A stretch of 64,000 nt of DNA, taken from positions 124,001-188,000 of the IMG/VR virus record IMGVR_UViG_3300022935_000005. One strand, 5' to 3'. Numbering within the stretch: position 1 is the first letter of the stretch; each line of letters begins with the position of its first letter. Position numbers and translations under genes: made by a program. Below, in pieces: positions 5,673 to 39,013 of this stretch. The notes under the pieces are model-generated. The model was not told the DNA's origin, did not search any database, and worked only from the letters and a program-made list of their open reading frames with translations.

Positions 5673-5676
5673 TAAA

Positions 5677-5874
5677 GTGACTAAAGGTATAAACGGTGAA
5701 GATCAAGATAGAGCAGCTCTTAGAGAGAAGTTTTTAGAAGACCTAAGAAAACTTGAGAAACTTGAAGTACCGCTTCCGATGCGTAATCTGTTAGAGATCA
5801 TTGAATTGGTTAAGAAAGACGAGGAAGCTCTAGAAGTTTTAAGAGAAGAGATACTTAAAAATCATGGCCAATGA
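5677..5874 (+). CDS. Hypothetical protein
   Basis: 65-aa ORF packed tightly in the operon. Confidence 0.5.
   Translation: MTKGINGEDQDRAALREKFLEDLRKLEKLEVPLPMRNLLEIIELVKKDEEALEVLREEILKNHGQ
5851..5857 (+). promoter_or_regulatory. Putative late promoter ATACTTA
   Basis: 6 nt before ATG 5864. Confidence 0.35.
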
Positions 5875-8800
5875 AAAAGACTACATTCCAGAAGGTTCAA
5901 GCCCAAACGGCGCCGTTAAAGAGGGCGATGACCTGAGCACCTCTGCAAAGGCCACGCTGGGGTCGTATCTGAGTTCTCTGACCAAGTCTCCTGACACTAA
6001 GAATGCTTTTCCAATAGATGATAATCCTATCGCTGAAACGTCTCTTAGGGGTACATCTGGACTACCAGCAGAATTTAAGACGGGTGGAGCCGATGAGACT
6101 CAAGGATTTACAAGAACGTTCCCGACGGGTGGGAAGTCGTCCGAGTCAGCAGTTAATAATTTTGAGACATTAAGCAACTCTGGAAAGATATCAACTTTAT
6201 CCGACGTTCTAAATAAGAACGCTCAAACTGATGGCCATAATCTATTAAGAGATGTGGTCTCAAACAGGGAACCCGGCGAACCCGGTGTCGGTGATCCTAC
6301 GGGGGCGTCTGCTGTCAAGTCTCCCTCCGGCGAGACACCAGTACAAAAGAAGATATCTAGTATGCTCCGGACTGGTAACAGGTTCGACCCGACGCCTGGA
6401 TCAAGTCCCTATATCGAAGATGGCCGATTCACAGAGCCCGGAATTCCTATAACTCAAAGCGGTTTTGGTGTATACGACGACGATGCTGTAAGGACAAGTT
6501 TGAATGATCTTCACAAGATCGCTCACTCGTTGATGGTGCGCTCCACTGGTCACAGGATGAGTAATTCCTCAGATCCAGACGGCGGAAGCGCGGTGTCGAC
6601 AACTGATGTTCAGATGGGCTCTGCAAAGGTTGACGTAGAGAAGCTTCGTCCTACCAACGTCTATGCGTCTCCAGAGAAGATACAGCTTCAAAATGCCGAA
6701 CTTCGTTATGACGATATTACAGGGGCCGCCTTACCAGCACAAAAGACTTTTGGTAATCTTTCATCTTATAGGGAACCTTTTGAGCATGCTGTTTTTGCGA
6801 ACCTTAATACAGCTGTGCAGGCGCTTGGTGAGTATCTTTTAGGTGCTGCAGTGTTTACTGCACTTATTACCCTTGTGGAACTCTTAGAGTCGACAGAAAA
6901 ACCCCACAATCCTAAGTCTCCGCGTAGCCTTGCGAAGGGAAGATGGTATAAGGAAGGTACTATCCTCCGTATTCTACGGCAGGCAGGATTTCCTCGACTA
7001 GATCGTCCAGCTTGGAAATGTGCGATATACGGTTTAGCTGCTTGGTTGAAGATTCCGCCATCCGCTCTTCCCGATGCGTCAGATGAGGCACCTTCCCCGA
7101 TCCCGTCTTTTCCACCCTTGCCTGAGGTCAGTGCTGTAACAGGTATGTCTTCCGTCGCGGCATGGTTTTCAGAAGTTGCAGCATCTGGCGATGATGTGCT
7201 GTTCAACGCGCTTTATGGATCTGGGTACTACGCAAACGTGATGAGAGTAGTTAGAAGAGATTTAGACAGAATGTTGGAGACTGTGACTCTGGACAGTGGC
7301 ACAACATCCGGACCAGACGGCGCTCGAGCCATTTTCGATATGATAATGAACTTGAACAGATATCCTGCCTGGAATTTCTTCGTTTCAATTTTGACGATGG
7401 GCGACGCTTGGCTGAATTCATACAACAAATATGTGAAGTTTAACGCGCTAAGCACGACTGGCCAGACGAGAACCCAAATGAGCCGACAGCCTGGGAGTGA
7501 CAAACAGGCTTGGAGACACCGATCGGCGCCAGCTCTTGTGCTTCTAAACGAGAAGTACACTAATGCTGCTACCGCTTTTGGGTACCACCCGACATTTATG
7601 CAAGAGTTGCACTCCAGAATTGGAGATGACGAATCAAGAACACCAGTTCCGTACGGCGATAACCTGAGACCGGGTGGAAACAACAGGGGTGTTAAAGGGA
7701 ATGCTGCACAGTCTTCGATCCGGTATAGCAGAGAAGACGTAGAGTTGATTGAAAACGAACTTGATGCAGAGTATTGTCCCTTCTACTTTCATGACCTTCG
7801 TACTAACGAGGTGATAAGCTTCCATGCCTTCTTGAATGATCTAAAAGACTCATATAGCGTGTCATACTCTGAGAGCGCGGGATATGGGAGGATAGACAAG
7901 GTCAAGATCTACCAAGACACAACAAGAAGTATAAGTTTATCATGGACGCTTGTGTCTACTTCACCTGACGATTTTGATTCCATGTGGTGGAGTGTAAACA
8001 AGCTCGTCTCTATGCTTTACCCTTCATTCTCACCAGGGAAATCTGTCAAAGCCGGTGATAAGAAGTTTGTAATGCCGTTCTCTCAGATCCCGACGGCGTC
8101 GCCAGTCATAAGACTAAGGGTGGGTGATGTCGTAAGGAGTAACTATAGCAGGTTTAATCTCGCAAGGATATTCGGTTTGTCAGAGATAAAGCTTGCGCCG
8201 GCAGACGCAGAGAAGGGTAAGAGTACTGAAGTCAATAAAGAACTGGCCGCTGCTGGCTTTGATATATCTGCCGCGTCCGCAGTAAGTTCTGCGAAAGCAG
8301 ATTCTGACAAAGAATATAAAGAAGCATTCGATGCCGCAACCAAAGAACGAACGGCACGCTTCTCAACAGAACCTGCCTCCGCTGCTGATGTTGCCCATGG
8401 ATACCTACCGGGTGATGAGACGTGGGGCTACGCGATACTTTCGCCAAGTTCAGCAGGTTATACGACATATGACACTAAAGCTGGGAAGATAATTCCCGCT
8501 GCTTCAACTGGTGATAAAAGCCAAAACACTCATAACACGAACCCGCCCGATGGCGGTGATCATGTAACTTCAAAGGCTTTTAGATCTCGTCCGACGACGT
8601 CCGGTAAGGTTAAGATTCTAGAGAGGCAAGTGTACTCAAGTTACGATGCCGAAGGTGAACTAGAGGCATCTTATGCGGAATATTTTGTGCAGTATGAAGA
8701 TCAAGATGATGCAGCAGACCCGTACGGACCAGCAAGCGCCAAGGGACATTTTCACACTTATGTCGTTACGTCGAATGATCTTGCGCCTATTCCAGCTACA

Positions 8801-9274
8801 ATCAAGAAGCTTACACCAGCTGATCCTGCAATCACATTAGACACTCAAATAGAGGATGTTGATAAATTCTTTGATCCCAAGAATAACGCAATTGTTCGAT
8901 CTTTTGAAGCCGCCGGCGGCCGAGGACTAGCGGGTGTTATAACAAGCATGGACTTCGACTGGAATGAAGCACAATGGGATATGAGTGGGCTGGGACGTCG
9001 CGCTCCAACGATGTTGACGATTTCGATTTCGTTTAGCCCGATTCATGATATTATTCCAGGCCTGGATAGTAATGGTATGATGAGGTCCATGAACTATCCT
9101 GTCGGAGGTCTCGCGGGACCGATGGCGACAGATTATCATGACAAGGGTGGAATTAGAAGTCCGTTTAACAGTGCAAAAACACCAGAGGTTAGTTCGAAAG
9201 TCACCGATGATCGTTCAGCGAACTACGACAACTTTGCTAAATCAATAGACAAAGACGGCGAAGGTGGAGGATAA
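5864..9274 (+). CDS. Baseplate/tail-tube-initiator-like structural protein
   Basis: 1136 aa; segment PFYFHDLRTNEVISFHAFL...GYGRIDKVKIYQDTTRSISLSW resembles tube-initiator domains; position after the tape measure gene. Confidence 0.55.
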   Translation: MANEKDYIPEGSSPNGAVKEGDDLSTSAKATLGSYLSSLTKSPDTKNAFPIDDNPIAETSLRGTSGLPAEFKTGGADETQGFTRTFPTGGKSSESAVNNFETLSNSGKISTLSDVLNKNAQTDGHNLLRDVVSNREPGEPGVGDPTGASAVKSPSGETPVQKKISSMLRTGNRFDPTPGSSPYIEDGRFTEPGIPITQSGFGVYDDDAVRTSLNDLHKIAHSLMVRSTGHRMSNSSDPDGGSAVSTTDVQMGSAKVDVEKLRPTNVYASPEKIQLQNAELRYDDITGAALPAQKTFGNLSSYREPFEHAVFANLNTAVQALGEYLLGAAVFTALITLVELLESTEKPHNPKSPRSLAKGRWYKEGTILRILRQAGFPRLDRPAWKCAIYGLAAWLKIPPSALPDASDEAPSPIPSFPPLPEVSAVTGMSSVAAWFSEVAASGDDVLFNALYGSGYYANVMRVVRRDLDRMLETVTLDSGTTSGPDGARAIFDMIMNLNRYPAWNFFVSILTMGDAWLNSYNKYVKFNALSTTGQTRTQMSRQPGSDKQAWRHRSAPALVLLNEKYTNAATAFGYHPTFMQELHSRIGDDESRTPVPYGDNLRPGGNNRGVKGNAAQSSIRYSREDVELIENELDAEYCPFYFHDLRTNEVISFHAFLNDLKDSYSVSYSESAGYGRIDKVKIYQDTTRSISLSWTLVSTSPDDFDSMWWSVNKLVSMLYPSFSPGKSVKAGDKKFVMPFSQIPTASPVIRLRVGDVVRSNYSRFNLARIFGLSEIKLAPADAEKGKSTEVNKELAAAGFDISAASAVSSAKADSDKEYKEAFDAATKERTARFSTEPASAADVAHGYLPGDETWGYAILSPSSAGYTTYDTKAGKIIPAASTGDKSQNTHNTNPPDGGDHVTSKAFRSRPTTSGKVKILERQVYSSYDAEGELEASYAEYFVQYEDQDDAADPYGPASAKGHFHTYVVTSNDLAPIPATIKKLTPADPAITLDTQIEDVDKFFDPKNNAIVRSFEAAGGRGLAGVITSMDFDWNEAQWDMSGLGRRAPTMLTISISFSPIHDIIPGLDSNGMMRSMNYPVGGLAGPMATDYHDKGGIRSPFNSAKTPEVSSKVTDDRSANYDNFAKSIDKDGEGGG

Positions 9275-9276
9275 TA

Positions 9277-9570
9277 ATGCCAACAAGATACAAAAGATCT
9301 CCACGCATAAAAGGCGGCAAGTCTTATGGCACGTATTCCGCAGGTTATGCTATAAACAGAGCTGTTAATTCAGGCGCACTAGATTTTGTCAAGAGGGTCA
9401 CAGTAGAAAATGATCGTCTTGATATTATCGCTGGTGAATACTACGGAGACGGAACCCTGTGGTGGGTGATTGCTGCTGCTAGTGGGATTGGGTGGGGTCT
9501 TCAAGTTCCAGCTGGGATTGAATTAATTATTCCTGTCAACATTGGACAGATAGAAGCCCTGGTGGGGTAA
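9277..9570 (+). CDS. Baseplate wedge protein, LysM/tail-X-like (gp53-like)
   Basis: DRLDIIAGEYYGDGTLWWVIAAAS motif. Confidence 0.75.
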   Translation: MPTRYKRSPRIKGGKSYGTYSAGYAINRAVNSGALDFVKRVTVENDRLDIIAGEYYGDGTLWWVIAAASGIGWGLQVPAGIELIIPVNIGQIEALVG

Positions 9571-12500
9571 ATGGCAATATACGACTCCAAACTTGGTGAC
9601 ATAATAGCCGCTCTTGGTCGGTACTATAGCATCGTGTCAAAAGAAAAATTCACCTCGATCCTTGCGTTCGGTGATGAAAATACGATAGACAAGTTTGGGA
9701 ACGTTGATTTTGACTCTACACCTGAGATCGAGAAATTAGCTAGGACGTTTAACGACGCCACCGAGGGCGGAGTTATCATGTCGAAGAACGTAGAGGCTCT
9801 TAAAGATATAGTAACTGGTGACTCTGATTCTTTGAAGCTCGCGATGAAAACGTATCAATACGTTGGAGAGCCAGACACGTTTTCGTCTATATTCTCGAGC
9901 GATGATTACAAGAAGATATGTTCTCCCATAAGTGTTAGGGACATGTGCCGTATAACTCCAGGGTCTGACGGTAGCGAAGACGGTACAATCAACGGTGCAT
10001 TTGCTTCTCCAACGAAGTTTACCCCTAACCTTTGCGCTCTCCAAATTAAAAATCCAAAGCTGGTCCCTGCTACCCGCGACTCCGGGGCTGCTGCCTTATT
10101 TATGAATGCTATCCCGACTCTAGAGTTCTCGAGATGCCAACCGTATCTCGATATAACACTTGTCTCGCCTATGAAAGGCCTCAGCGAAGACGGTCGTATA
10201 CAAACACTTAGCTTGATGCAACATGTAGCAGGGCAGAGCCAGCCTGCAACAGACGTAGACAAAGCTTTGGCGACAGCATTAAACGAAGAAGCTGTGCAGG
10301 GTAAGCTGGAGAGTGAAGAAGCCCGTGCTGCAGCCGGCCTTGACGGCGACGGTAAGAAAACATCGGGAGGTTCTGATACCATCGCTTCCGCCGAAGACTT
10401 AGATGTAGCGACTGTTGGGATGGAGATCTTCACCGCTCCCCAAACTCTAGTCCCAACACTAAACGGTCAACTAGAGGGATATACTGATTTCGAAGCGTTC
10501 TCTAACGTTAAGGGAGACGATGGTAAACCAGTCTCTGCAGGCGGCCGCAGGGGAGCTCCTATCATTGACCCTTTCCGTCCTTTGATGAGTATAGAAGATT
10601 TCGGTATTTCTGTTACACCCTCGAAGGGGATGATGTCACACAAGACTGCTGATCTTTCCCTTGTCTTACATGACAGATCTCGTCTGACGGAAATATCCGA
10701 GTTCGTGAAACCAGATCTATACGGTCGGACTGAGCTTTTGATAACCTACGGATGGTCTCACCCTGATAACGACTTAGCAAGCGGAAATTATTACGGTGCA
10801 TTCTTGGACGCGCTTAAGGTGACCGAAAAATATATGATCGTCAACAGCTCGTTTTCTTTTGACGACGTAGGGCAAGTCAAGATTAAACTTAAGCTATCGA
10901 TGAAAGGCGCCTCGAATGTCGATACAAATAATATCAGCCAAGGTGAAGACGTAGAAGATGCGATGCAGGCGCTTAAAGATATGGTCGATGTGATCAAAAA
11001 ACTTAAAGCTACTGCCCTTAAAGATGCCGCTGCGACGGGCGGAACGAAGGAAGCGAAGGACGTCTTTGGAAAGTCGTTTTTTAGTGCTGCATCTGATACA
11101 AGCCGCGCTTTGACGATGGATGAAGAAACACAGAAAGCGTTAAAGAAGTATATATCTGCGAACAGGGGTGCCGAAGGTACGTCAGGTCAGCTGGCAGATA
11201 CTTTGGAAGACATGTTCGGTAAAGATGGGAAAGGTGGCGCCGCCGCGCAACTAAAGAAGACAATCGCGGATGCAGTTGGCGAGAAGATAAGCCACTTGAA
11301 AAAGATGCGCCAGTCGAAAAAAGATCCATTTGCCAAAGAAGTGACAGGTCATAATGGCAGTAAAAGCTTTGTCAATATCCCACAGTGGTCGAATAATCAT
11401 ATTTCGTACGGCGCGTTACTCATGTATATGGTGGGAAAACCTCTTGCTGCCACTAAGAGATTTGACGAGATCCAGTTTTTGTTCTATCCTATGAATGATA
11501 AGTCTTCTTATCTAAAGGATTTAACGACTGCTGAAATCCCAATCAACTTAAAGCAGTTTGACTTAGTCTTTAAAGAAAACACGAAGAATACAGTTAATCT
11601 TCCTCTTGGTAGGTTTATGGGTATGATGGGTAAAGAGTTTATCCATAATCAGACTGCAGAAGCGTTCGGTCTTGCTTCTTTGTACGACACTGACAAAGAA
11701 GGTAAAAAGACAGTGAAAGAGAAATTCAAGGAAGATCCAACAAAGCTTAACGACGAGAAAAAGAAGCGCCTTGAAGATGCCTACGGGGACACTTCGGAGC
11801 TTGAATTCAAGATGCCAAGAGTTAGGTTTCATATTGAAGCTGTACCTGCAAAAGATACAGGTCATCCCGAAGGCCGCCGTGCAACGATACTCAGGATCCA
11901 TATATACGATTCAGTATGTACTCCCTACACTGCGCTTAATAGGTTGTCTCAAGCCACACGTTCAAACTCGATGGGTCTTTTAACAACTGCTGCTACGAAC
12001 ACAACTCGAGCGATGAACACAGAGGCGGAATTCGGTCTTGACGCCGATATTTCAGTCGATCACAAAACAGCATTTTTAGAGCAGCTACAGGAAGCGCTAG
12101 ACTACGGTTTACTGGAAGCTGTACCCTCGATGTCTGAAGATGATATGAAATCTTATGATCCAGCCACTCAACCTGATACGTACTTTAGGGTTAAAGGCGG
12201 GTTTCCCGCGCTAAAGGGGTTCATCCAAAGCACAATGCCGTCGATAATATATGGTTCTACAAACTCCGCTGTGTTATCTGCTGACTTATCATCTATGAAT
12301 GACCCGAAGCTTGCCTCGATTAACATGATGCGTGGGGGAATGGGCGGAGGTACAACCGCACAGGGCGTTAGAGACGCTGGCTTACCATTACAGACAGCCC
12401 CGGTCACTCTTTCAATGAATACATTTGGATGTCCAGTAATAAGTTATGGACAGAACTTTTTTGTTGACTTCGGCACCGGGACCACAATAGATAATGTGTT

Positions 12501-12642
12501 TGTTGTCTCGGGGATCGACCACTCTCTTTCAAAGGGAAAGTTCGAGACGAAAATCAAGATGACACAGGTCGACGCGTTTGGTAGCTATACCAGCATGATA
12601 ACGAATATCACTAAGACACTAACAGCATTAAAAGATTCGTAG
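9571..12642 (+). CDS. Baseplate hub-like protein
   Basis: 1023 aa; C-terminal GCPVISYGQNFFVDF...VVSGIDHSLSKGKFETKI typical of hub (gp27/gpD-like) proteins; synteny. Confidence 0.55.
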   Translation: MAIYDSKLGDIIAALGRYYSIVSKEKFTSILAFGDENTIDKFGNVDFDSTPEIEKLARTFNDATEGGVIMSKNVEALKDIVTGDSDSLKLAMKTYQYVGEPDTFSSIFSSDDYKKICSPISVRDMCRITPGSDGSEDGTINGAFASPTKFTPNLCALQIKNPKLVPATRDSGAAALFMNAIPTLEFSRCQPYLDITLVSPMKGLSEDGRIQTLSLMQHVAGQSQPATDVDKALATALNEEAVQGKLESEEARAAAGLDGDGKKTSGGSDTIASAEDLDVATVGMEIFTAPQTLVPTLNGQLEGYTDFEAFSNVKGDDGKPVSAGGRRGAPIIDPFRPLMSIEDFGISVTPSKGMMSHKTADLSLVLHDRSRLTEISEFVKPDLYGRTELLITYGWSHPDNDLASGNYYGAFLDALKVTEKYMIVNSSFSFDDVGQVKIKLKLSMKGASNVDTNNISQGEDVEDAMQALKDMVDVIKKLKATALKDAAATGGTKEAKDVFGKSFFSAASDTSRALTMDEETQKALKKYISANRGAEGTSGQLADTLEDMFGKDGKGGAAAQLKKTIADAVGEKISHLKKMRQSKKDPFAKEVTGHNGSKSFVNIPQWSNNHISYGALLMYMVGKPLAATKRFDEIQFLFYPMNDKSSYLKDLTTAEIPINLKQFDLVFKENTKNTVNLPLGRFMGMMGKEFIHNQTAEAFGLASLYDTDKEGKKTVKEKFKEDPTKLNDEKKKRLEDAYGDTSELEFKMPRVRFHIEAVPAKDTGHPEGRRATILRIHIYDSVCTPYTALNRLSQATRSNSMGLLTTAATNTTRAMNTEAEFGLDADISVDHKTAFLEQLQEALDYGLLEAVPSMSEDDMKSYDPATQPDTYFRVKGGFPALKGFIQSTMPSIIYGSTNSAVLSADLSSMNDPKLASINMMRGGMGGGTTAQGVRDAGLPLQTAPVTLSMNTFGCPVISYGQNFFVDFGTGTTIDNVFVVSGIDHSLSKGKFETKIKMTQVDAFGSYTSMITNITKTLTALKDS

Positions 12643-28131: not shown

Positions 28132-28917
28132 ATGGCAATAGTAATTAGAGCAAGCGGAACTTCACTGGAAGTCCCCAGTTCACCAACGTCAGACTTTACT
28201 ACCGGTCTGTCTGCTAGATACCTATTCACGTCAGACGCATCAGACTCGTTAGGGAACTATGATACAATGACAGCCGAATCTGCTGTAACTTATGATAGTA
28301 GTAACGGCGTTTACTTTGAGAAAATTGGAAACACAAGTAGGATAAGTCTTGGTGCTGACAGCACATCAACGTCGGCATCTAAGTTACTGAATGATATCGG
28401 TACCAACGACGGCACAATATCATTCTGGCTAAATCCTGACACGAATCAGATAGATGATTCGGGCAATGATGCTTCGTTCATCCTTGGCTCTTACGCTGGT
28501 TCGACTATAGGCACCCGAGGTCCCCAGTTTGGGTACTTCGACGATCAACCGACCGTCAATGGTGACAAGGGCGGGTGGCATTTCTTTAGCCGAGTTGGGA
28601 CCGGTTCATCCTTTGAAGGTGTTCTTTGGGAAGGAGATTCCGGGACTACTTGGGTACATATAGTATTCACTTACGATAGTGCAACCGACACAGCCAAGCT
28701 TTACAAAGATGGAAGCCTAGCAGATACGCAAACGTTTGCTAACGGTTTTCCTCAAGATCGCCGAGAGTGGATAATGAACGGTTCAGCCCAAAGCCCAACC
28801 GCTTCAACACTACAGTGGGAGGGATACTTTAAAGACCTCAGCATTTGGGACGGTCGCATCTTAACAGCAGACGAGATCAGTGATCTTTACGACAACGGTC
28901 ACGGCGGCAGCTACTAG
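28132..28917 (+). CDS. LamG/concanavalin A-like domain protein 1
   Basis: GTISFW, WVHIVFTYD, LYKDG, FKDLSIWDGRILTADEISDLY. Confidence 0.8.
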   Translation: MAIVIRASGTSLEVPSSPTSDFTTGLSARYLFTSDASDSLGNYDTMTAESAVTYDSSNGVYFEKIGNTSRISLGADSTSTSASKLLNDIGTNDGTISFWLNPDTNQIDDSGNDASFILGSYAGSTIGTRGPQFGYFDDQPTVNGDKGGWHFFSRVGTGSSFEGVLWEGDSGTTWVHIVFTYDSATDTAKLYKDGSLADTQTFANGFPQDRREWIMNGSAQSPTASTLQWEGYFKDLSIWDGRILTADEISDLYDNGHGGSY

Positions 28918-28926
28918 GGAGGAATT

Positions 28927-29667
28927 ATGCCGATAATATTTAAGGTAAGTCGCTCCATAGACTTTACAACAGATCTCGTGGCTAGGTATCTTTTTACGTC
29001 AGACACATCAGATTCGCTTGGAAATTATTCAGATGTATACGCTGGTTCTGGTGTTACCTTTGATTCATCTGGGGCACGTATGCAGACCACCTCGAACCAT
29101 AAGATCAAATTTGGCGCTGATGGTTTATCGAATCTATCGACAACATTGAATGATCTAAACGGTGTTGGGGGGACGATATCATTCTGGGTTAAGATGAACA
29201 CAGGGTACACCGCTGGTGGGACTGCTGATAATCGTTATATCTTTGGTTCTTACAGAGGCGGGTCAGCCAACCAGCGTGGGGTCCATTTTGGGTACTTTGA
29301 CCAAAACAGCGTTCTCGCTAGCGGCGCAGGCGGATGGCATTTCTTCAATAGCGCCAGTCCAGCCTCGGCCGGATATGAGGGTATCGTCGCGACTGGTGAC
29401 TCTGGTACTTCTGAGGTGCATATAGTCGTTACTATAGACAACGGTGACTTCCGCATGTACAAAGACGGCTCGCTGGTAGGTACCGAGACTGCAAGTTACT
29501 GGCCTGAATATTCTCTTGAGTGGGAGGTAAATGGCTCTGCTGGAAGCTACCTTACCTCGCGTATGTTCGATGGGTGGTTCAAGGACTTGTGCGTGTGGGA
29601 TGGAAGAGTGTTGTCAGCAGCAGAGGTAGCGGCGTTGTACAGCAATGGATCTGCTGGAAGCTTTTAG
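28927..29667 (+). CDS. LamG/concanavalin A-like domain protein 2
   Basis: GTISFWVK, HIVVT, MYKDG, LCVWDGRVLSAAEVAALY. Confidence 0.8.
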   Translation: MPIIFKVSRSIDFTTDLVARYLFTSDTSDSLGNYSDVYAGSGVTFDSSGARMQTTSNHKIKFGADGLSNLSTTLNDLNGVGGTISFWVKMNTGYTAGGTADNRYIFGSYRGGSANQRGVHFGYFDQNSVLASGAGGWHFFNSASPASAGYEGIVATGDSGTSEVHIVVTIDNGDFRMYKDGSLVGTETASYWPEYSLEWEVNGSAGSYLTSRMFDGWFKDLCVWDGRVLSAAEVAALYSNGSAGSF

Positions 29668-29675
29668 GGGGAAAC

Positions 29676-30470
29676 ATGCCAATCATATTTAAGATAGATA
29701 ATATAATCGACAACTTGGTATCTGCGATAAATTCTCGCTGGAAGCTAGAGACAAATGCTGATGACTCTGTAGGTTCCAACGACGGCACTGTTGTTTCTGC
29801 GACTGGTGCTGGTACAGACGTTTCATTTGGTACCGCTGGGGATACTTCTGCTGCAATCTTTGCGGGAGGACAAGCCAACCAGCACGTCAATGGAAAAATA
29901 TCTCTTCCAACAGCAGCAACAGATGACTTTAACTTTGAATATGGTTCTGGGACGATATCTTTTTGGGTAAGACCTGCAAACATTTCAACGTTTTACATGT
30001 TGTCAGATTACGCACCTTCATCTGAACCGGATGGGTTTGCGTTCTGGCAAGCAATGGACTACTACAGTTATAAGTACGATGAAGAGGGACCGGCCACCCG
30101 GCTTCTCTTGATAAGTTCTCCCTCATCGGACAGCTTAGCAGGATCGGTCTTAGCGGCTTCAAACACTCGGGTTTCCGCTAACAACTGGTCTCACATATGT
30201 TACGTAAAGAACCATAACGTGAGTACATTGTACATAAACGGTGAGCCGGTAGAGCAGAAAGTATGGAATGACAACAGGCCGTTTGTCAGCAGCGCTTCTT
30301 CGCTGGTACCGGGATCAACTAGAAATGTTGGCATCGGTTCTCAGACGGGAACAGTTGGGCAAAGGTATCCGGGAGCTATAAAAGATGTCATTGTTGCCAA
30401 GGGTTACGCGGCGAGCTCTCTTCAAGTCAAGCAGCTTTATTTAGCTGGTAACGAAGCACCTGATCTATAG
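29676..30470 (+). CDS. LamG/concanavalin A-like domain protein 3
   Basis: ATG 29676 (MPIIFK, as in paralogue 2); TISFWVRP, WSHICYV, LYING. Confidence 0.75.
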   Translation: MPIIFKIDNIIDNLVSAINSRWKLETNADDSVGSNDGTVVSATGAGTDVSFGTAGDTSAAIFAGGQANQHVNGKISLPTAATDDFNFEYGSGTISFWVRPANISTFYMLSDYAPSSEPDGFAFWQAMDYYSYKYDEEGPATRLLLISSPSSDSLAGSVLAASNTRVSANNWSHICYVKNHNVSTLYINGEPVEQKVWNDNRPFVSSASSLVPGSTRNVGIGSQTGTVGQRYPGAIKDVIVAKGYAASSLQVKQLYLAGNEAPDL

Positions 30471-30479
30471 GAGAGAACT

Positions 30480-31199
30480 ATGATTATTGTTAGAGCAAGC
30501 GGAACCTCATCGGAATCCCCTAATTTTACTACCGATCTGTCTGTGAGATACCTTCTAACTTCGAACTACGATGATTCCGTCACTTCTGATTCTGCAACTG
30601 CAGTCAGCTCGCCAGACGGAGTTAATTCTGAAGGCTTTTCGTCGAGTCAGGGGTATCTTCAGATGCCGAGCTCATTCGCATCCGCGATGTTTTGGGACAC
30701 TGGAGACGGTACTCTGTCTTGGTGGAACACTTTTGATGAAGTACCCCCTACAAACAACGTCTACGCTTTTACAGATCGTGAAGGTGGAAACTCCAACGAT
30801 ACAGGGGCTATAAGCATTTATCTCGGCGGAGATTACCTCCGGTTTTATAGGAACTACGAAAATTCACAAGGTAATTACGGTCCATCCATGACAAGAGCTG
30901 AGTCAGGGCTAGATTATACCTCGCCTTTTCAGCAGAACCATATCGTCTTAGTTAAGGACACGACATCATCGACTATGAAGGTCTACGTGGACGGTGCCGA
31001 AGTCGATTCTGTGGCCTGGGGCTCAACCGATCAGTGGGTGATCAGCGCATCCAGGACATGGTACATAGGAAACTATAATACGGGTACTTATTATGATTGG
31101 CCTGGTAGAATCGCGGATGTAGCTGTGTGGAAAGGACGTGCACTTAGCGCTAGCGAGGTAACCGCACTCTACAATAAAGGCCAGGGCGGAAGCTACTAG
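30480..31199 (+). CDS. LamG/concanavalin A-like domain protein 4
   Basis: TLSWW, HIVLV, VYVDG, IADVAVWKGRALSASEVTALY. Confidence 0.8.
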   Translation: MIIVRASGTSSESPNFTTDLSVRYLLTSNYDDSVTSDSATAVSSPDGVNSEGFSSSQGYLQMPSSFASAMFWDTGDGTLSWWNTFDEVPPTNNVYAFTDREGGNSNDTGAISIYLGGDYLRFYRNYENSQGNYGPSMTRAESGLDYTSPFQQNHIVLVKDTTSSTMKVYVDGAEVDSVAWGSTDQWVISASRTWYIGNYNTGTYYDWPGRIADVAVWKGRALSASEVTALYNKGQGGSY

Positions 31200-31205
31200 T
31201 CTACA

Positions 31206-31232
31206 TGTAAATCCGGTACCAGTCCATATAAT
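31206..31232 (+). promoter_or_regulatory. Sigma70-like promoter TGTAAA-N15-TATAAT
   Basis: Consensus -10 box 5 nt before ATG 31238. Confidence 0.6.
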
Positions 31233-31237
31233 ACATC

Positions 31238-31660
31238 ATGAGCTGGATACCACCGAAATCTCCTTTTGATTTACTTCAAGAAAGGTATTGGCCAGACGAT
31301 TGGAAAATTCTGATCGTCTGTCTTTTATTGAACCAAACAAGCCGTAAACAAGTTGAGCCAATGATCGAGTCATTCTTCGAGAAGTGGCCTGATCCAGAGT
31401 CAGCTTCCAATGCTGATGAAGATGAGATGCGTGATCTTGTCCGTCCTCTTGGCATGTTCAACCGCCGGGTGAAATCCATCAAAAAGATGTCTCAACAGTT
31501 CATGTCTGGTTTCGATAACGCAATCGAGCTTTATGGTTGTGGAAAGTATGCCGATGACACCTACCGAATCTTTATGAAGGGTGAGTGGAGAGATGTTGAG
31601 CCAAATGATCATGCTCTGAACGATTATCACGGATATTTACGGGAGGTGTATTCTGCCTGA
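31238..31660 (+). CDS. MBD4-like HhH-GPD mismatch DNA glycosylase (stand-alone catalytic domain)
   Basis: WIPPKSPFDLLQE...WKILIVCLLLNQTS...PLGM..RR...ELYGCGKYADDTYRIF...WRDVEPNDHALNDYH parallels the recalled MBD4 glycosylase domain. Confidence 0.85.
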   Translation: MSWIPPKSPFDLLQERYWPDDWKILIVCLLLNQTSRKQVEPMIESFFEKWPDPESASNADEDEMRDLVRPLGMFNRRVKSIKKMSQQFMSGFDNAIELYGCGKYADDTYRIFMKGEWRDVEPNDHALNDYHGYLREVYSA

Positions 31661-32465
31661 AGGTCCTGAGGTAAAGAAGACCACAGACGGATTGAGAGAG
31701 TTCTTCTTAAATGAGGAGATAACTGCTCTAGATTTCGGATCTGGAAGGTACGCCAAGAAAGAACCCATCGGCTACTCATCTTTTTGCGAAGAACTTCCAA
31801 AGCTGGTGACAGCAGTTGGATGCAAGGGAAAGTTCATCTATTTTGTGTTTGCAGACGGCAGCAGCATGTGGAACACTTTAGGCATGACAGGATGGTGGTC
31901 AGAGACAGCAGGCTATCATCCTCGCGCTGCGTTGTATGTCAATGATGATAAACATATGGTGTATAACGATATGAGGAATTTTGGGACCTTCAAGTTTGTC
32001 AGCACATACGATGAGCTAAAGAAGAAACTTAACTCCTTAGGCCCAGACTTGCTCTCTGAAGATGTTTCGTTAGATGTATTTAAGAAAAGCCTTACGAAAG
32101 GAAAGAGGGCTGAGAAACCCATCTCGCAACTCTTGATGGATCAATCTGTCGTGTCAGGAATTGGAAACTACCTCAAGGCAGAGATCTTGTACAGCTGCAA
32201 GATGTCTCCTCATCGGCTGTGTCAAGATATCTCTGATGGCGAGTTCGAGTCGCTGCTTTACGCTTCAAGAAGTATTATGAAGTTATCGTATAGCACTGGT
32301 GGTGCGACCATCCGAAATTATAAAAGCACGACTGGTAAAAATGGCATGTACACTAGAAGGTTCGCTGTCTATAATCAAAAGAGTGATCCTCTTGGAAACG
32401 CTGTAGTCAGAGAAACGACGGCTGATAAAAGGACCACACACTGGGTTCCAAGTATTCAGAAATAA
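31653..32465 (+). CDS. Fpg/Nei-family DNA glycosylase/AP lyase with zincless finger; CTG start
   Basis: CTG-CCT-GAA-GGT-CCT-GAG-GTA = (M)PEGPEV with SD GGAGGT 5 nt upstream; KGKF, GMTG, DMRNFG, H2TH LMDQSVVSGIGNYL, RTTHWVPSIQ. Confidence 0.9.
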   Translation: MPEGPEVKKTTDGLREFFLNEEITALDFGSGRYAKKEPIGYSSFCEELPKLVTAVGCKGKFIYFVFADGSSMWNTLGMTGWWSETAGYHPRAALYVNDDKHMVYNDMRNFGTFKFVSTYDELKKKLNSLGPDLLSEDVSLDVFKKSLTKGKRAEKPISQLLMDQSVVSGIGNYLKAEILYSCKMSPHRLCQDISDGEFESLLYASRSIMKLSYSTGGATIRNYKSTTGKNGMYTRRFAVYNQKSDPLGNAVVRETTADKRTTHWVPSIQK

Positions 32466-32474
32466 GGAGTTAAA

Positions 32475-32705
32475 ATGGAAAACTTAAATCTAACTGATAA
32501 TGCGATTTCCCATATCGCCAAGCTCGTACAGGTCGCGATTTTGACAGGTACTGATATCGTCGACAACTTACGAATGGCTCAGTTTGTAACTGTGAATGGC
32601 CAGATTGAAGTGTCACCCGACTACCAAGAGACTTTTGACGCCAATATTCAGAAGATGCTTTCAGAAGCCACTCAGCTCGCTGCGGATGGTGAAGCACAGG
32701 AGTAA
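32475..32705 (+). CDS. Hypothetical protein
   Basis: SD AGGAG; 76-aa ORF. Confidence 0.65.
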   Translation: MENLNLTDNAISHIAKLVQVAILTGTDIVDNLRMAQFVTVNGQIEVSPDYQETFDANIQKMLSEATQLAADGEAQE

Positions 32706-32707
32706 AG

Positions 32708-33073
32708 ATGCAAGATAGGCTAGAGCAGATTTTTGAACTCCGCCAGGAGTTTATGTCTAAGATTAATCAAAAGATACCGGGAGCTTACCCTGAATGGCCC
32801 ATTGATCTTTCTTCAAAGGCAGATCAGAAAGCTGTTCGAGAATTTGCGTTCCGAGGTATGGAAGAGCTCTTTGAGGCTCTGTTACATCTCAAGAACTGGA
32901 AAGACCATAGAGCTGGGTCTGGTGACTTTGATCGAGACGAGTTTGTTGAAGAGATGATTGATGCCTATAAATACTTTACTGCAATTTTGATTCTCATGGG
33001 TGTAGATAGCCAGGAGTTTTTCGAGTGCTACGTTAATAAGCACAATAAGATTTGCGATAGGCTAAATCAATGA
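32708..33073 (+). CDS. All-alpha dNTP pyrophosphatase (dimeric dUTPase / T4 gp56 dCTPase-like)
   Basis: EELFEA, KNWKDH, EEMIDAYKY, YVNKHNKICDR motifs. Confidence 0.75.
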   Translation: MQDRLEQIFELRQEFMSKINQKIPGAYPEWPIDLSSKADQKAVREFAFRGMEELFEALLHLKNWKDHRAGSGDFDRDEFVEEMIDAYKYFTAILILMGVDSQEFFECYVNKHNKICDRLNQ

Positions 33074-37990: not shown

Positions 37991-39013
37991 ATGCACTTAG
38001 GCACTTATGAAGGTTTCACTGACTGTTATGTTGATATGATTTCAAAGGTCATGCGTGAACCGCAATACGAATCTGCACCTCGCGGCCAGAATATCAAAGA
38101 GATCCTCGGGGCTTCATTTACAATCAAGAACCCTCGTGACAGAATTCCTTACGTCGTAGGTCGTAAGTTTAGCATGAGTTACATGGTCGCTGAGCTGATA
38201 TGGTATCTTGCGGGTGATAATAGTACTGAGTGGATATCGAAGTATTCATCCTTCTGGAAAGATATTAGTGACGACGGTGTGACTGCAAATTCAGCGTATG
38301 GTGCCCGTCTCTTTAAGCCGCATGACAAGATTGCGCAGGGCAGATATACTCAGCTCGATTACGTGATTGAAGAGCTTAAACGAGATCCTGATTCTCGGCG
38401 AGCTGTCATGCATCTAAGAGTTCCAGATGACTCTATTGATGCGAAGCTTGATGTACCTTGTACACTAGCTCTACAGTTTTTTATTAGAAACGGTGCTCTA
38501 CACCAAGTTGCTAACATGAGAAGCTCGGACTTGATTTTTGGGATTGCTTACGATATTCCCGCATTCACAATGTTTCAAGAACTGATTGCAAATGAGCTTG
38601 GCGTTGATGTGGGTACGTACACTCACACAAGCAACTCACTCCATATCTACGAACGTCATTTTGATATGGCTGAAGAGATTACTAGAACGGGCCTCGTTGA
38701 TGAATCGCTGAATCTACAACAGGCAAATGGTCCTATGCCACCGCTGGTAGGTGATATCAAAGAAGTCCAAGAGAAGGTGGCTGAAGTCTACGAGTATGAA
38801 TCCCAACTACAGCGTTGCGAGAATTTACAGGATGTAATAAACCTACATGATTTAAGCCAGTCTTTCTCTGATTCTATGTTCCGTGATTTTGCAACTATTC
38901 TTACGTCATCTCGTCTAAGAAAACTTGGTCATAAAGCGGATGCGCGAGCAATGTCCGCGCAGACGTCCTTTAGCGGATATTCTTTTAATGTCAGGAGTAA
39001 CTCTAATGCATAA
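37991..39013 (+). CDS. dCMP hydroxymethylase-like thymidylate synthase homologue (T4 gp42-like)
   Basis: ELIWY, NSAYG, DSRRAV, PCT (Cys157), MRSSDLIFGIAYD with Asp188 at the ThyA Asn177 position, SLHIYERHF. Confidence 0.85.
   Translation: MHLGTYEGFTDCYVDMISKVMREPQYESAPRGQNIKEILGASFTIKNPRDRIPYVVGRKFSMSYMVAELIWYLAGDNSTEWISKYSSFWKDISDDGVTANSAYGARLFKPHDKIAQGRYTQLDYVIEELKRDPDSRRAVMHLRVPDDSIDAKLDVPCTLALQFFIRNGALHQVANMRSSDLIFGIAYDIPAFTMFQELIANELGVDVGTYTHTSNSLHIYERHFDMAEEITRTGLVDESLNLQQANGPMPPLVGDIKEVQEKVAEVYEYESQLQRCENLQDVINLHDLSQSFSDSMFRDFATILTSSRLRKLGHKADARAMSAQTSFSGYSFNVRSNSNA

What the first reader, a model, noticed from the sequence alone, without database searches (positions are those of the whole stretch)
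31642..32465. Nei glycosylase needs a CTG start codon and resembles Mimivirus Nei1
The ORF track starts at TTG 31692, but Fpg/Nei enzymes need an N-terminal catalytic Pro (PE motif). The frame reads CTG-PEGPEV from 31653, with GGAGGT 5 nt upstream, and overlaps the MBD4-like stop. This implies a rare CTG initiation, possibly to keep expression low, or a single-base error. The protein has a zincless finger (DPLGNAV...KRTTHWVPSIQK) and motifs (SGRYAKKEPIGY, WNTLGMTG, DMRNFGTFKF) close to my recollection of Mimivirus Nei1, suggesting gene exchange between jumbo phages and giant viruses. Together with the MBD4-like gene and the dNTPase, it forms a BER operon.
Basis: partly seen in the sequence, partly recalled or inferred. 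Interest (0 to 1): 0.6.

Follow-up and report, generated by a model that had tools for sequence, protein, structure and literature searches.

The report
Jumbo phage Nei with CTG start
A 281-kb bacteriophage from salt-marsh water carries a DNA-repair glycosylase of the type known from Mimivirus, and the gene really does begin at a rare CTG codon, one case of a pattern of weak start codons that recurs across this phage gene family.

Summary
The frame is open from 31620. CTG 31653 directly precedes PEGPEV. GGAGGT(G) lies 4-5 nt upstream, and the upstream gene's TGA (31658-60) overlaps codons 2-3. C at 31653 is not an error: two ~20x DNA assemblies, one metatranscriptome assembly and three other IMG/VR contigs all read CTG.

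Orthologues of 89-98% identity carry ATT, ATG, GTG and probably TTG at the same position, with dN/dS of 0.03-0.07. Among 77 distinct viral homologues the counts are ATG 60, TTG 6, ATT 5, GTG 3, ATC 2 and CTG 1. Near-cognate starts arose at least 7 times.

The protein is a complete Fpg/Nei enzyme with a cysteine-free zincless finger. Its best solved relative is Mimivirus Nei1 (E 1e-56, about 40-45% identity).

The subfamily is mostly phage. There are 287 IMG/VR hits, many on 250-290 kb contigs with a terminase, a few giant-virus MAGs, and almost nothing in 185,579 prokaryote genomes. This phage is not specially close to the giant-virus sequences.

The upstream gene is a true MBD4-domain homologue (E 1e-37). 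MBD4-like, Nei, p76 and p121 form a conserved block. p121 looks MazG/dCTPase-like, but that is inconclusive.

Verdict: an ordinary enzyme family and a real, rare start codon. The useful new points are the start-codon turnover and the phage-dominated family.

The parts
31642..31648 (+). Extended Shine-Dalgarno sequence GGAGGTG, 4 nt before the CTG (5 nt if read as GGAGGT)
   Evidence: It is invariant in all close orthologues. The same extended motif stands before 7 of 8 near-cognate starts in the family, against 8 of 69 other starts.
31653..31655 (+). CTG initiation codon of nei (inferred start)
   Evidence: It directly precedes the obligatory N-terminal Pro. C at 31653 is confirmed in 3 run assemblies and in L013-15. 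Orthologues have ATT, ATG or GTG at the same position, and probably TTG.
31653..32465 (+). nei coding sequence: 270 codons including the start, mature protein 269 aa, stop TAA 32463-65
   Evidence: dN/dS is 0.03-0.07 against orthologues.
31656..31661 (+). Pro1-Glu2, the catalytic N-terminal dipeptide of Fpg/Nei enzymes
   Evidence: Invariant in alignment A2. It aligns with P-E of MvNei1 and of bacterial Fpg/Nei.
31692..31694 (+). TTG used by ORF callers as the start; in fact internal Leu13
   Evidence: The public record of this protein starts here. The 13 codons upstream are conserved, with only synonymous changes.
31656..31988 (+). Fpg/Nei N-terminal beta-sandwich domain (residues 1-111), with Lys59 (31830-32), Met77 (31884-86), Arg107 (31974-76) and Phe109
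   Evidence: Pfam PF01149, E 1.6e-13. These residues are invariant in A2.
32037..32318 (+). Helix-two-turn-helix (H2TH) DNA-binding domain (residues 128-221), with Asn171
   Evidence: Pfam PF06831, E 9e-18.
32358..32462 (+). Zincless finger (residues 235-269): a beta-hairpin with invariant Arg259 (32430-32) and no cysteine
   Evidence: Pfam PF21025, E 1.2e-9. The AF2 model has strands 251-254 and 260-263 at pLDDT 90 or more. It aligns with the MvNei1 C-terminus.
31238..31660 (+). MBD4-glycosylase-domain homologue (140 aa, HhH-GPD). Its TGA stop overlaps nei codons 2-3.
   Evidence: Best PDB hits are MBD4 structures 4dk9, 3iho and 1ngn: E 1e-37, 132 bits, full length. Pfam PF00730. It lies directly upstream of nei in many phage loci.
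32475..32705 (+). Conserved 76-aa ORF of unknown function, immediately after nei
   Evidence: Homologue at the same place in 67 fetched loci. No family hit.
32708..33073 (+).
   Evidence: Homologue at the same place in 56 loci. Acidic motifs are conserved (A3). AF2 pLDDT 90.9. Foldseek and VIA top hits are dCTPase, DR2231 and MazG, but with E 0.17 or more and Z under 8. Pfam PRA-PH E 0.087.

Best explanation
Window 31653-32465 encodes a functional DNA glycosylase/AP lyase of the Fpg/Nei family. It belongs to the zincless-finger subtype whose only studied member is Mimivirus Nei1.

Translation starts at CTG 31653. Initiator tRNA reads it as fMet. Deformylase and methionine aminopeptidase then expose Pro1, the catalytic nucleophile.

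The weak codon is usable for two reasons. It sits 4-5 nt behind a 7-nt Shine-Dalgarno sequence (GGAGGTG). Ribosomes also finish the upstream MBD4-like gene 5 nt downstream of it, giving translational coupling or re-initiation. Nei output is therefore low and tied to translation of its partner glycosylase.

Shown: the sequence features, the correctness of the base, purifying selection, family membership and conserved gene order.

Inferred: initiation at CTG, coupling, low output and enzymatic activity.

The pair probably acts in sequence. The monofunctional MBD4-like enzyme removes T, U or 5hmU opposite G. Nei removes oxidised pyrimidines and cuts the abasic sites. The gene is an ordinary component of a large family of aquatic tailed jumbo phages. 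It is not a recent import from a giant virus.
For: Start codon:
- No canonical start lies in frame between the upstream stop (31617) and Pro1.
- C31653 is identical in two ~20x DNA assemblies, one RNA-library assembly and three other IMG/VR contigs.
- Close orthologues have ATT (L001/2), ATG (L003-5) and GVG-type GTG (L006-11) at exactly this position behind the same SD. A 92%-identical freshwater contig reads TTG.
- dN/dS is 0.03-0.07 among these variants.
- The 13 codons before the TTG change only synonymously.

Family-wide pattern:
- ATG 60, TTG 6, ATT 5, GTG 3, ATC 2, CTG 1.
- At least 16 start-codon changes and at least 7 origins of near-cognate starts.
- 7 of 8 near-cognate starts follow GGAGGT(G).
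- 6 of 7 first-surveyed near-cognate loci have an upstream gene ending within 17 nt of the start.
- AUU, AUC and CUG are the near-cognates that initiate at about 1-2% of AUG in E. coli (bioRxiv 10.1101/063800).

Enzyme:
- All three Pfam domains score above cut-off.
- P1, E2, K59, M77, R107, F109, N171 and R259 are invariant.
- MvNei1 is the top hit by sequence (196 bits, against 85 for the next) and by fold (TM 0.86-0.88, 38-40% identity).

Phage nature:
- The record is 281 kb with a terminase and sheath genes.
- TerL is present in 16 of 41 related records, including all 5 that are at least 90% complete. No NCLDV capsid was found in any of 43.

Partner gene and block.
Against: - There is no protein-level evidence, neither an N-terminal peptide nor ribosome profiling.
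- The host and its translation apparatus are unknown.
- An in-frame ATT at 31650 directly precedes the CTG and could take some initiation. That would give Met-Leu-Pro, an inactive N-terminus. Its spacing to the SD (1-2 nt) argues against it.
- The link between near-cognate starts and the extended SD is strong in raw counts but not significant on phylogenetically independent pairs (4-5 of 6 the same way, none opposite, p about 0.06-0.25).
- RNA-library contigs show presence, not transcription.
- The TTG variant rests on a single contig at 4x depth.
- Activity and substrates are inferred from 40-45% identity to MvNei1.
Confidence: 0.8

Rival explanations
1. The weak start codons carry no regulatory meaning. 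Because nei is translationally coupled to the upstream gene behind a very strong SD, the identity of the start codon is nearly neutral and drifts among ATG, GTG, TTG, CTG, ATT and ATC.
For: Rapid turnover between near-identical orthologues and between sister sequences on the tree. Most family members (60 of 77) still use ATG. Turnover partly comes through 1-nt indels in the overlap region.
Against: Near-cognate starts make up about 10% of lineages. In E. coli, by contrast, only two non-canonical starts (infC, pcnB) have been confirmed. They co-occur with the strongest SD, which looks like compensation. Neither point excludes drift.
Confidence: 0.35
2. Translation starts at TTG 31692 as the ORF callers say. 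This would give a 257-aa protein without Pro1-Glu2, that is, an inactive remnant or a DNA-binding protein.
For: This is the call of the automatic pipelines. The public record starts there.
Against: No good SD stands before the TTG. The 13 upstream codons are conserved with synonymous-only changes. 111 of 120 homologues start MPEGPEV. The truncated calls (P0004, P0113) all coincide with an ATT at the Pro-1 position.
Confidence: 0.04
3. CTG is a sequencing or assembly error for ATG.
For: None found.
Against: The base is identical in contigs from two DNA runs at about 20x and one RNA-library run, and in three IMG/VR contigs from other metagenome ids. Relatives show other non-ATG codons at the same site.
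Confidence: 0.01
4. The gene was recently acquired by this phage from a Mimivirus-like giant virus, or the reverse.
For: MvNei1 is the best solved relative. The window protein scores higher against MvNei1 (196 bits) than six other family members tested, including three giant-virus MAG proteins (138-174 bits).
Against: Identity to MvNei1 is only about 40-45%. The window protein lies in a starred 20-row clade within a 72-row group of SD-using phages. The six GVMAG sequences group elsewhere, beside AT-rich jumbo phages. Gene order around nei is conserved across phages. Bit scores may only reflect the short branch of the window clade. MvNei1 itself could not be placed in the tree.
Confidence: 0.04

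Closest known systems
Mimivirus Nei1 (MvNei1, L315; PDB 3A42, 3A45, 3A46, 3VK7, 4NRW)
   Same: Full-length collinear alignment, E 1e-56. Same fold, TM 0.86-0.88. Same N-terminal PEGPEV, the same SGRY..EP.GY, WNT.G.TG and DMRNFGTFKF motifs, and the same cysteine-free C-terminal hairpin ending KRTT.W.P.IQK (Pfam PF21025).
   Different: Only about 40-45% identical. The phage protein is about 18 residues shorter, lacking two MvNei1 insertions. It is encoded by a tailed phage with a Shine-Dalgarno sequence and a CTG start, in an overlapped pair with an MBD4-like gene. No biochemistry exists for it.
Human NEIL1 (zincless-finger Nei-like enzyme)
   Same: Zincless finger in place of a zinc finger, N-terminal Pro-Glu and an H2TH domain. 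PMC7139703 names hNeil1 and MvNei1 as the known zincless examples.
   Different: Sequence similarity is confined to about 45 residues of the H2TH (29 bits, E 5e-6). Bacterial MutM scores far higher (85 bits). The phage protein is therefore not a NEIL1 orthologue by sequence.
Bacterial Fpg/MutM and Nei, and the Fpg genes of cultured phages (Bacillus phage G gp292, SP-10, Nachito)
   Same: Same three-domain architecture and the same catalytic residues.
   Different: 22-28% identity. Those carry the Cys4 zinc finger family signature. NCBIfam fpg and nei equivalog scores are far below their cut-offs.
E. coli infC and pcnB (AUU starts), and measured near-cognate initiation
   Same: Use of AUU, AUC or CUG as an initiation codon read by initiator tRNA, with low efficiency (1-2% of AUG; bioRxiv 10.1101/063800).
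   Different: Here the start site is pinned by a catalytic N-terminal residue. The codon varies among six types in one orthologous family. No IF3 feedback is known for it.
Mammalian MBD4 glycosylase domain (partner gene 31238-31660)
   Same: 135 aligned residues, E 1e-37. This includes the GKY..D.YRIF segment with the Asp that I know as catalytic in MBD4 (the role of the residue is from my own knowledge).
   Different: A stand-alone 140-aa protein without a methyl-CpG-binding domain. It is a phage gene with kin in the Xanthomonas phage Xp12 group.

Membership tests
Fpg/Nei (H2TH) DNA glycosylases | Pro as the first residue of the mature protein, followed by the catalytic Glu | tested here: met
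   CCT GAA directly follows the inferred start. P1 and E2 are invariant in A2. Removal of the initiator Met is inferred, not observed.
Fpg/Nei (H2TH) DNA glycosylases | N-terminal beta-sandwich domain with the conserved Lys and the Met/Arg/Phe intercalating residues | tested here: met
   PF01149, E 1.6e-13, over residues 1-111. K59, M77, R107 and F109 are invariant.
Fpg/Nei (H2TH) DNA glycosylases | Helix-two-turn-helix domain | tested here: met
   PF06831, E 9.2e-18, profile positions 1-91 of 93.
Fpg/Nei (H2TH) DNA glycosylases | Glycosylase and beta,delta-lyase activity through a Schiff base at Pro1 | not testable with these tools
   Needs a purified enzyme.
Zinc-finger Fpg/Nei (E. coli Fpg, Nei; NEIL2) | C-terminal Cys4 zinc finger | tested here: not met
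   No cysteine in residues 235-269. No hit to zf-FPG_IleRS.
Zincless-finger Fpg/Nei of the MvNei1 type | Cysteine-free beta-hairpin with the conserved Arg in place of the zinc finger | tested here: met
   PF21025, 38.3 bits against a cut-off of 27. The model has a hairpin at 251-263 with high confidence. R259 is invariant. MvNei1 is the top hit by sequence and by fold.
Eukaryotic NEIL1 orthologues | Closer to NEIL1 than to bacterial Fpg/Nei over the whole length | tested here: not met
   NEIL1 scores 29 bits over 45 residues. T. thermophilus MutM scores 85 bits over the full length.
Genes with a non-canonical (near-cognate) initiation codon | The protein N-terminus maps to the near-cognate codon | not testable with these tools
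   Only indirect support: no other start is possible for an active enzyme, the start position is conserved with six codon types, and the base is confirmed.
MBD4-type HhH-GPD glycosylases (upstream gene) | HhH-GPD fold with full-length similarity to the MBD4 catalytic domain, including the conserved Asp | tested here: met
   E 1.3e-37 over residues 2-136. The Asp in GKY..D.YRIF is aligned. PF00730.
MazG-like all-alpha NTP pyrophosphohydrolases (121-aa ORF) | Four-helix bundle with the EExxE...ExxD metal-binding motifs and significant similarity to family members | tested here: inconclusive
   The bundle is predicted at pLDDT 90.9 and the acidic motifs are conserved. But Pfam PRA-PH gives E 0.087, the PDB profile search E 0.82, Foldseek E 0.17 or more, and VIA Z 6.5-7.8, which the tool warns is common for helical bundles.

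The most novel reading that the evidence does not exclude
The recurrent near-cognate start codons (CTG, ATT, ATC) behind an extra-strong SD are a selected device. They make Nei synthesis depend on termination of the overlapped MBD4-like gene, and perhaps on initiation-factor-3 availability during infection. This would fix the ratio of an AP-site-making glycosylase to its AP lyase. The phages concerned would replace cytosine with a 5-(hydroxy)methylated form, as suggested by the MilA-like cytidylate hydroxymethylase and the possible dCTPase nearby. In addition, Mimivirus Nei1 and its giant-virus kin would descend from this jumbo-phage gene family.
Probability: 0.15. Interest if true: 0.75.

Novelty: new member of a known kind. 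Interest (0 to 1): 0.5.

Why it matters
1. Annotation. Gene callers truncate this enzyme and at least two relatives (P0004, P0113) by 9-13 residues, removing the catalytic proline. Fpg/Nei genes with CTG, ATT or ATC starts are therefore under-called in viral databases.

2. Translation. Because the mature N-terminus must be Pro1, this family is a natural reporter in which the initiation site is known without proteomics. It shows six different start codons, at least 16 changes and at least 7 origins of near-cognate starts. That makes it a convenient set for testing how SD strength and translational coupling buffer start-codon identity.

3. Evolution of repair. The zincless-finger MvNei1 type, described in the literature I could search as one of 'a small number' of such enzymes (PMC7139703), is in fact common in aquatic jumbo phages and nearly absent from cellular genomes. 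This reframes the origin of the Mimivirus gene.

4. The conserved, overlapped MBD4-like/Nei pair is a compact two-enzyme base-excision module that can be tested in vitro.

Tried and rejected
- Megablast of the region against 50,697 cultured-phage records found nothing. tblastn found only Fpg genes of 28% identity or less, so no cultured relative is available.
- A search for the NCLDV major capsid (PF04451) in 43 related viral records found none. The AT-rich, SD-less relatives that looked like giant viruses instead carry a terminase and are jumbo phages. The six GVMAG records are not held and could not be searched. Their local context (PolB with an intein, genes on both strands) fits giant viruses.
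- MvNei1 itself could not be put into the tree. I used bit scores of seven family members against its PDB entry instead. Those scores are confounded by branch length.
- A profile search of the 121-aa family against PDB sequences gave nothing significant.
It is 42% identical to a LamG-domain protein of a relative.
- A phage-encoded initiator tRNA with an altered anticodon was looked for. There are only two tRNA-Met(CAT) among 7 tRNAs.
- Literature searches for MvNei1-type enzymes in phages found no paper.
Full report
WHAT IS THERE

The window is bases 124001-188000 of a 280,913-bp IMG/VR virus record that CheckV rates 92% complete. The record encodes a large terminase (PF03237) and two tail-sheath proteins. 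The window itself carries RecA/UvsX, DnaB, the ribonucleotide reductase large subunit, a Pol III alpha subunit, GroEL and thymidylate-synthase-like genes. Nearly all are on the + strand and have Shine-Dalgarno sequences. It is therefore a tailed jumbo phage. No cultured phage is close to it.

THE OBSERVATION

- The frame is closed by TGA 31617-19 and open from 31620.
- The only place from which an Fpg/Nei enzyme with an N-terminal proline can be made is CTG 31653-55, which is followed by PEGPEV.
- GGAGGT(G) stands 4-5 nt upstream.
- The upstream ORF ends in the TGA embedded in CC-TGA-A of nei codons 2-3.
- The mechanical ORF starts at TTG 31692 and loses 13 residues.
- A public protein record of this gene also starts at that TTG.

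IS THE CTG REAL?

Contigs from two salt-marsh DNA runs (depth about 20 and 21) and one metatranscriptome run (depth 8.3) are identical to the window over 31000-33000. Three further IMG/VR contigs with other metagenome ids also carry CTG (L013-15). Many of these samples may be the source environment, and contigs hide rare variants. Even so, a single-base assembly error is excluded.

COMPARATIVE EVIDENCE FOR THE START

Orthologues of 89-98% protein identity, found on metagenome contigs, align base for base around the start (A1).
- All keep GGAGGTG and the Pro codon.
- The codon between them is CTG in the window, ATT in L001/L002, ATG in L003-5 and GTG in L006-11.
- A 92%-identical freshwater contig (4x depth, one contig) reads TTG after a 1-nt insertion.
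- The 13 codons between this position and the TTG differ only synonymously.
- dN/dS over the gene is 0.03-0.07.

All start-codon variants are therefore working genes, and the N-terminal segment is translated.

THE FAMILY-WIDE PATTERN

I fetched 80 IMG/VR loci, 15 loci from prokaryote genomes and several assemblies. I then read the codon before Pro1 in each.
- Among 77 distinct viral sequences the counts are ATG 60, TTG 6, ATT 5, GTG 3, ATC 2 and CTG 1.
- The tree needs at least 16 start-codon changes and at least 7 origins of near-cognate (ATT, ATC, CTG) starts.
- 7 of 8 near-cognate starts stand behind GGAGGT(G), against 8 of 69 others.
- On phylogenetically independent pairs the association goes the same way in 4-5 of 6 and never the other way. 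That cannot reach significance (p about 0.06-0.25).
- In 6 of the 7 near-cognate loci surveyed, an upstream gene ends within 17 nt of the start.
- Often this is the same CC-TGA-A overlap, which the obligatory Pro-Glu codons make available.
- Gene callers truncated two relatives with ATT starts (P0004, P0113).

AUU, AUC and CUG are among the near-cognates (AUA, AUC, AUU, CUG) that initiate at about 1-2% of AUG in E. coli, where only infC and pcnB are confirmed non-canonical starts (bioRxiv 10.1101/063800). Re-initiation at non-canonical codons after nearby termination has been shown experimentally, although in a eukaryotic system (PMC4648390).

WHAT THE PROTEIN IS

- Pfam finds the Fpg/Nei N-terminal domain, the H2TH domain and PF21025, the cysteine-free C-terminal domain. 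All score above their cut-offs.
- NCBIfam fpg and nei equivalog models score far below their cut-offs.
- The best solved relative is Mimivirus Nei1: E 1e-56, 196 bits, end to end. I counted 121 identical positions out of 269 from the printed alignment.
- The next hit, T. thermophilus MutM, scores 85 bits. NEIL1 matches only 45 residues.
- An AlphaFold model (pLDDT 90.6) has MvNei1 structures as its top Foldseek hits: E 2e-30, TM 0.86-0.88, 38-40% identity.
- P1, E2, K59, M77, R107, F109, N171 and R259 are invariant in the family.

I conclude it is an active MvNei1-type glycosylase/AP lyase. Its likely substrates are oxidised pyrimidines and abasic sites. This rests on analogy with MvNei1, which was crystallised with 5-hydroxyuracil DNA (title of 3VK7), and on my own knowledge of MvNei1 biochemistry.

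PHAGES OR GIANT VIRUSES?

- The word search found 1,616 relatives. The IMG/VR scan found 287.
- None of 43 related records has an NCLDV capsid.
- 16 of 41 related records have a terminase. That includes all five that are at least 90% complete (250-290 kb) and the AT-rich, SD-less ones.
- Atlas clusters nearest the protein are 88-95% viral, mostly Uroviricota.
- Six of the 80 loci are giant-virus MAGs, with AT-rich promoters and, in one case, a neighbouring PolB with an intein.
- Across 185,579 prokaryote species genomes, a pattern scan found one 38% hit on a MAG contig and otherwise hits of 31% or less. The scan used family-specific patterns, so distant kin may be missed.
- In a quick maximum-likelihood tree rooted on bacterial Fpg, the viral sequences form one group.
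- The six GVMAG proteins cluster (support 59) beside AT-rich jumbo phages.
- The window lies in a separate 72-row group of SD-using phages, inside a starred 20-row clade.
- Deep branches are weak and the root is uncertain.

MvNei1 could not be added to the tree, because no reference exists for its sequence and I left the step out. It scores higher with the window protein (196 bits) than with three GVMAG proteins (139-174) or three other phage proteins (138-161). This may only reflect branch lengths.

So the subfamily is shared between jumbo phages and giant viruses and is phage-dominated. A recent transfer involving this phage is not supported.

THE NEIGHBOURS

- The 140-aa upstream protein is a full-length homologue of the MBD4 glycosylase domain: E 1e-37, with the conserved Asp aligned.
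- An HhH-GPD homologue lies directly upstream of nei in many phage loci and directly downstream in the AT-rich group.
- The 76-aa and 121-aa ORFs follow nei in 67 and 56 loci respectively.
- The 121-aa protein is predicted as a four-helix bundle with conserved acidic motifs.
- Its best fold matches are dCTPase/DCTPP1, DR2231 and MazG proteins. The scores are middling, and its Pfam and PDB sequence signals are not significant. A dNTP pyrophosphatase is plausible but not established.
- The 239-aa ORF upstream is a LamG paralogue.

MECHANISM PROPOSED

- Shown: an overlapped, conserved MBD4-like/Nei pair, a strong SD and a weak start codon.
- Inferred: ribosomes terminating at TGA 31658-60, or 30S subunits held by GGAGGTG, initiate at CTG with initiator tRNA.
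- Inferred: Met is removed to expose Pro1, and output is low and tied to the partner gene.
- Inferred: the monofunctional MBD4-like enzyme creates abasic sites that Nei's lyase cuts.

Whether the weak codon is selected or merely tolerated is open. I put drift at about one in three.

VERDICT

The enzyme is a new member of a known family. The CTG start is real and well supported by comparison, though unproven at the protein level.

The points worth keeping are:
- the start-codon turnover in a family whose start site is pinned by chemistry;
- the systematic truncation of such genes by gene callers;
- the finding that the Mimivirus-Nei1 type is mainly a jumbo-phage gene.

Noticed in passing
window 37991-39013 (+): The 340-aa 'thymidylate synthase' homologue is closer to MilA CMP 5-hydroxymethylase (PDB 5jnh/5b6d, E 2e-40, 142 bits) than to any true ThyA (87 bits or less). 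It has Asp where ThyA has the uracil-reading Asn (motif GIAYDIPAF). Relatives of the phage also carry ThyX. This suggests a cytosine (hydroxy)methylase and modified cytosine in the phage DNA, which would give the MBD4-like/Nei pair a specific job.
   Followed up: partly
window 31238-31660 (+): The MBD4-like glycosylase has 31-34% identical kin in the Xanthomonas phage Xp12 group, Stenotrophomonas phage AXL_1, Janthinobacterium phage Donnerlittchen and cyanophage S-TIM54, mostly annotated as hypothetical. From my own knowledge, Xp12 is the classic phage with 5-methylcytosine in place of cytosine.
   Followed up: partly
window 32475-32705 and 32708-33073 (+): Two small ORFs (76 and 121 aa) follow nei in 67 and 56 of the fetched loci. 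The 76-aa protein has no detectable family. The 121-aa protein is a predicted four-helix bundle resembling MazG/DCTPP1 dNTP pyrophosphatases, with inconclusive scores.
   Followed up: partly
window 28132-31199 (+): Four tandem ORFs are concanavalin-A-like/LamG (PF13385) paralogues: 28132-28917, 28927-29667, 29520-30470 and the divergent 30480-31199. A close relative (L004) has only two LamG-annotated ORFs here, so this array expands and contracts between near-identical phages.
   Followed up: partly
L001, L002, L112-L114, and the public record of the window protein: Automatic gene calls truncate nei wherever the start is ATT or CTG. Proteins P0004 and P0113 and the Atlas record begin 9-13 residues late, so the catalytic Pro-Glu is missing from database entries.
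   Followed up: yes
L064, L066, L069-L071, L074, L076, L078, L089: A subgroup of 250-270 kb jumbo phages with a terminase has AT-rich, Shine-Dalgarno-less gene starts and places the HhH-GPD gene after nei rather than before it. Their Nei proteins sit nearest the giant-virus MAG sequences in the tree. Their hosts may be SD-poor bacteria such as Bacteroidota (my guess).
   Followed up: partly
G000:C1:210284-215396 (outside the window): There is a cluster of 7 tRNA genes: Met(CAT) twice, plus Asn, Glu, Leu(CAA), Gln and Thr. Genome G+C is 44.9%.
   Followed up: no
window 1254-12642 (+): Three very large ORFs (1472, 1136 and 1023 aa) have no Pfam hit, and the two scanned against PHROGs (1136 and 1023 aa) have no hit there either. 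They lie just downstream of the sheath genes of the record and may be structural.
   Followed up: no
L093 (Acidiferrobacteraceae MAG contig PBOB01000001.1): This is the only 'cellular' genome hit above 31% identity (38%). It lies on a 61-kb MAG contig and branches at the base of the viral clade on a long branch. It may be a binned viral contig or a prophage.
   Followed up: no
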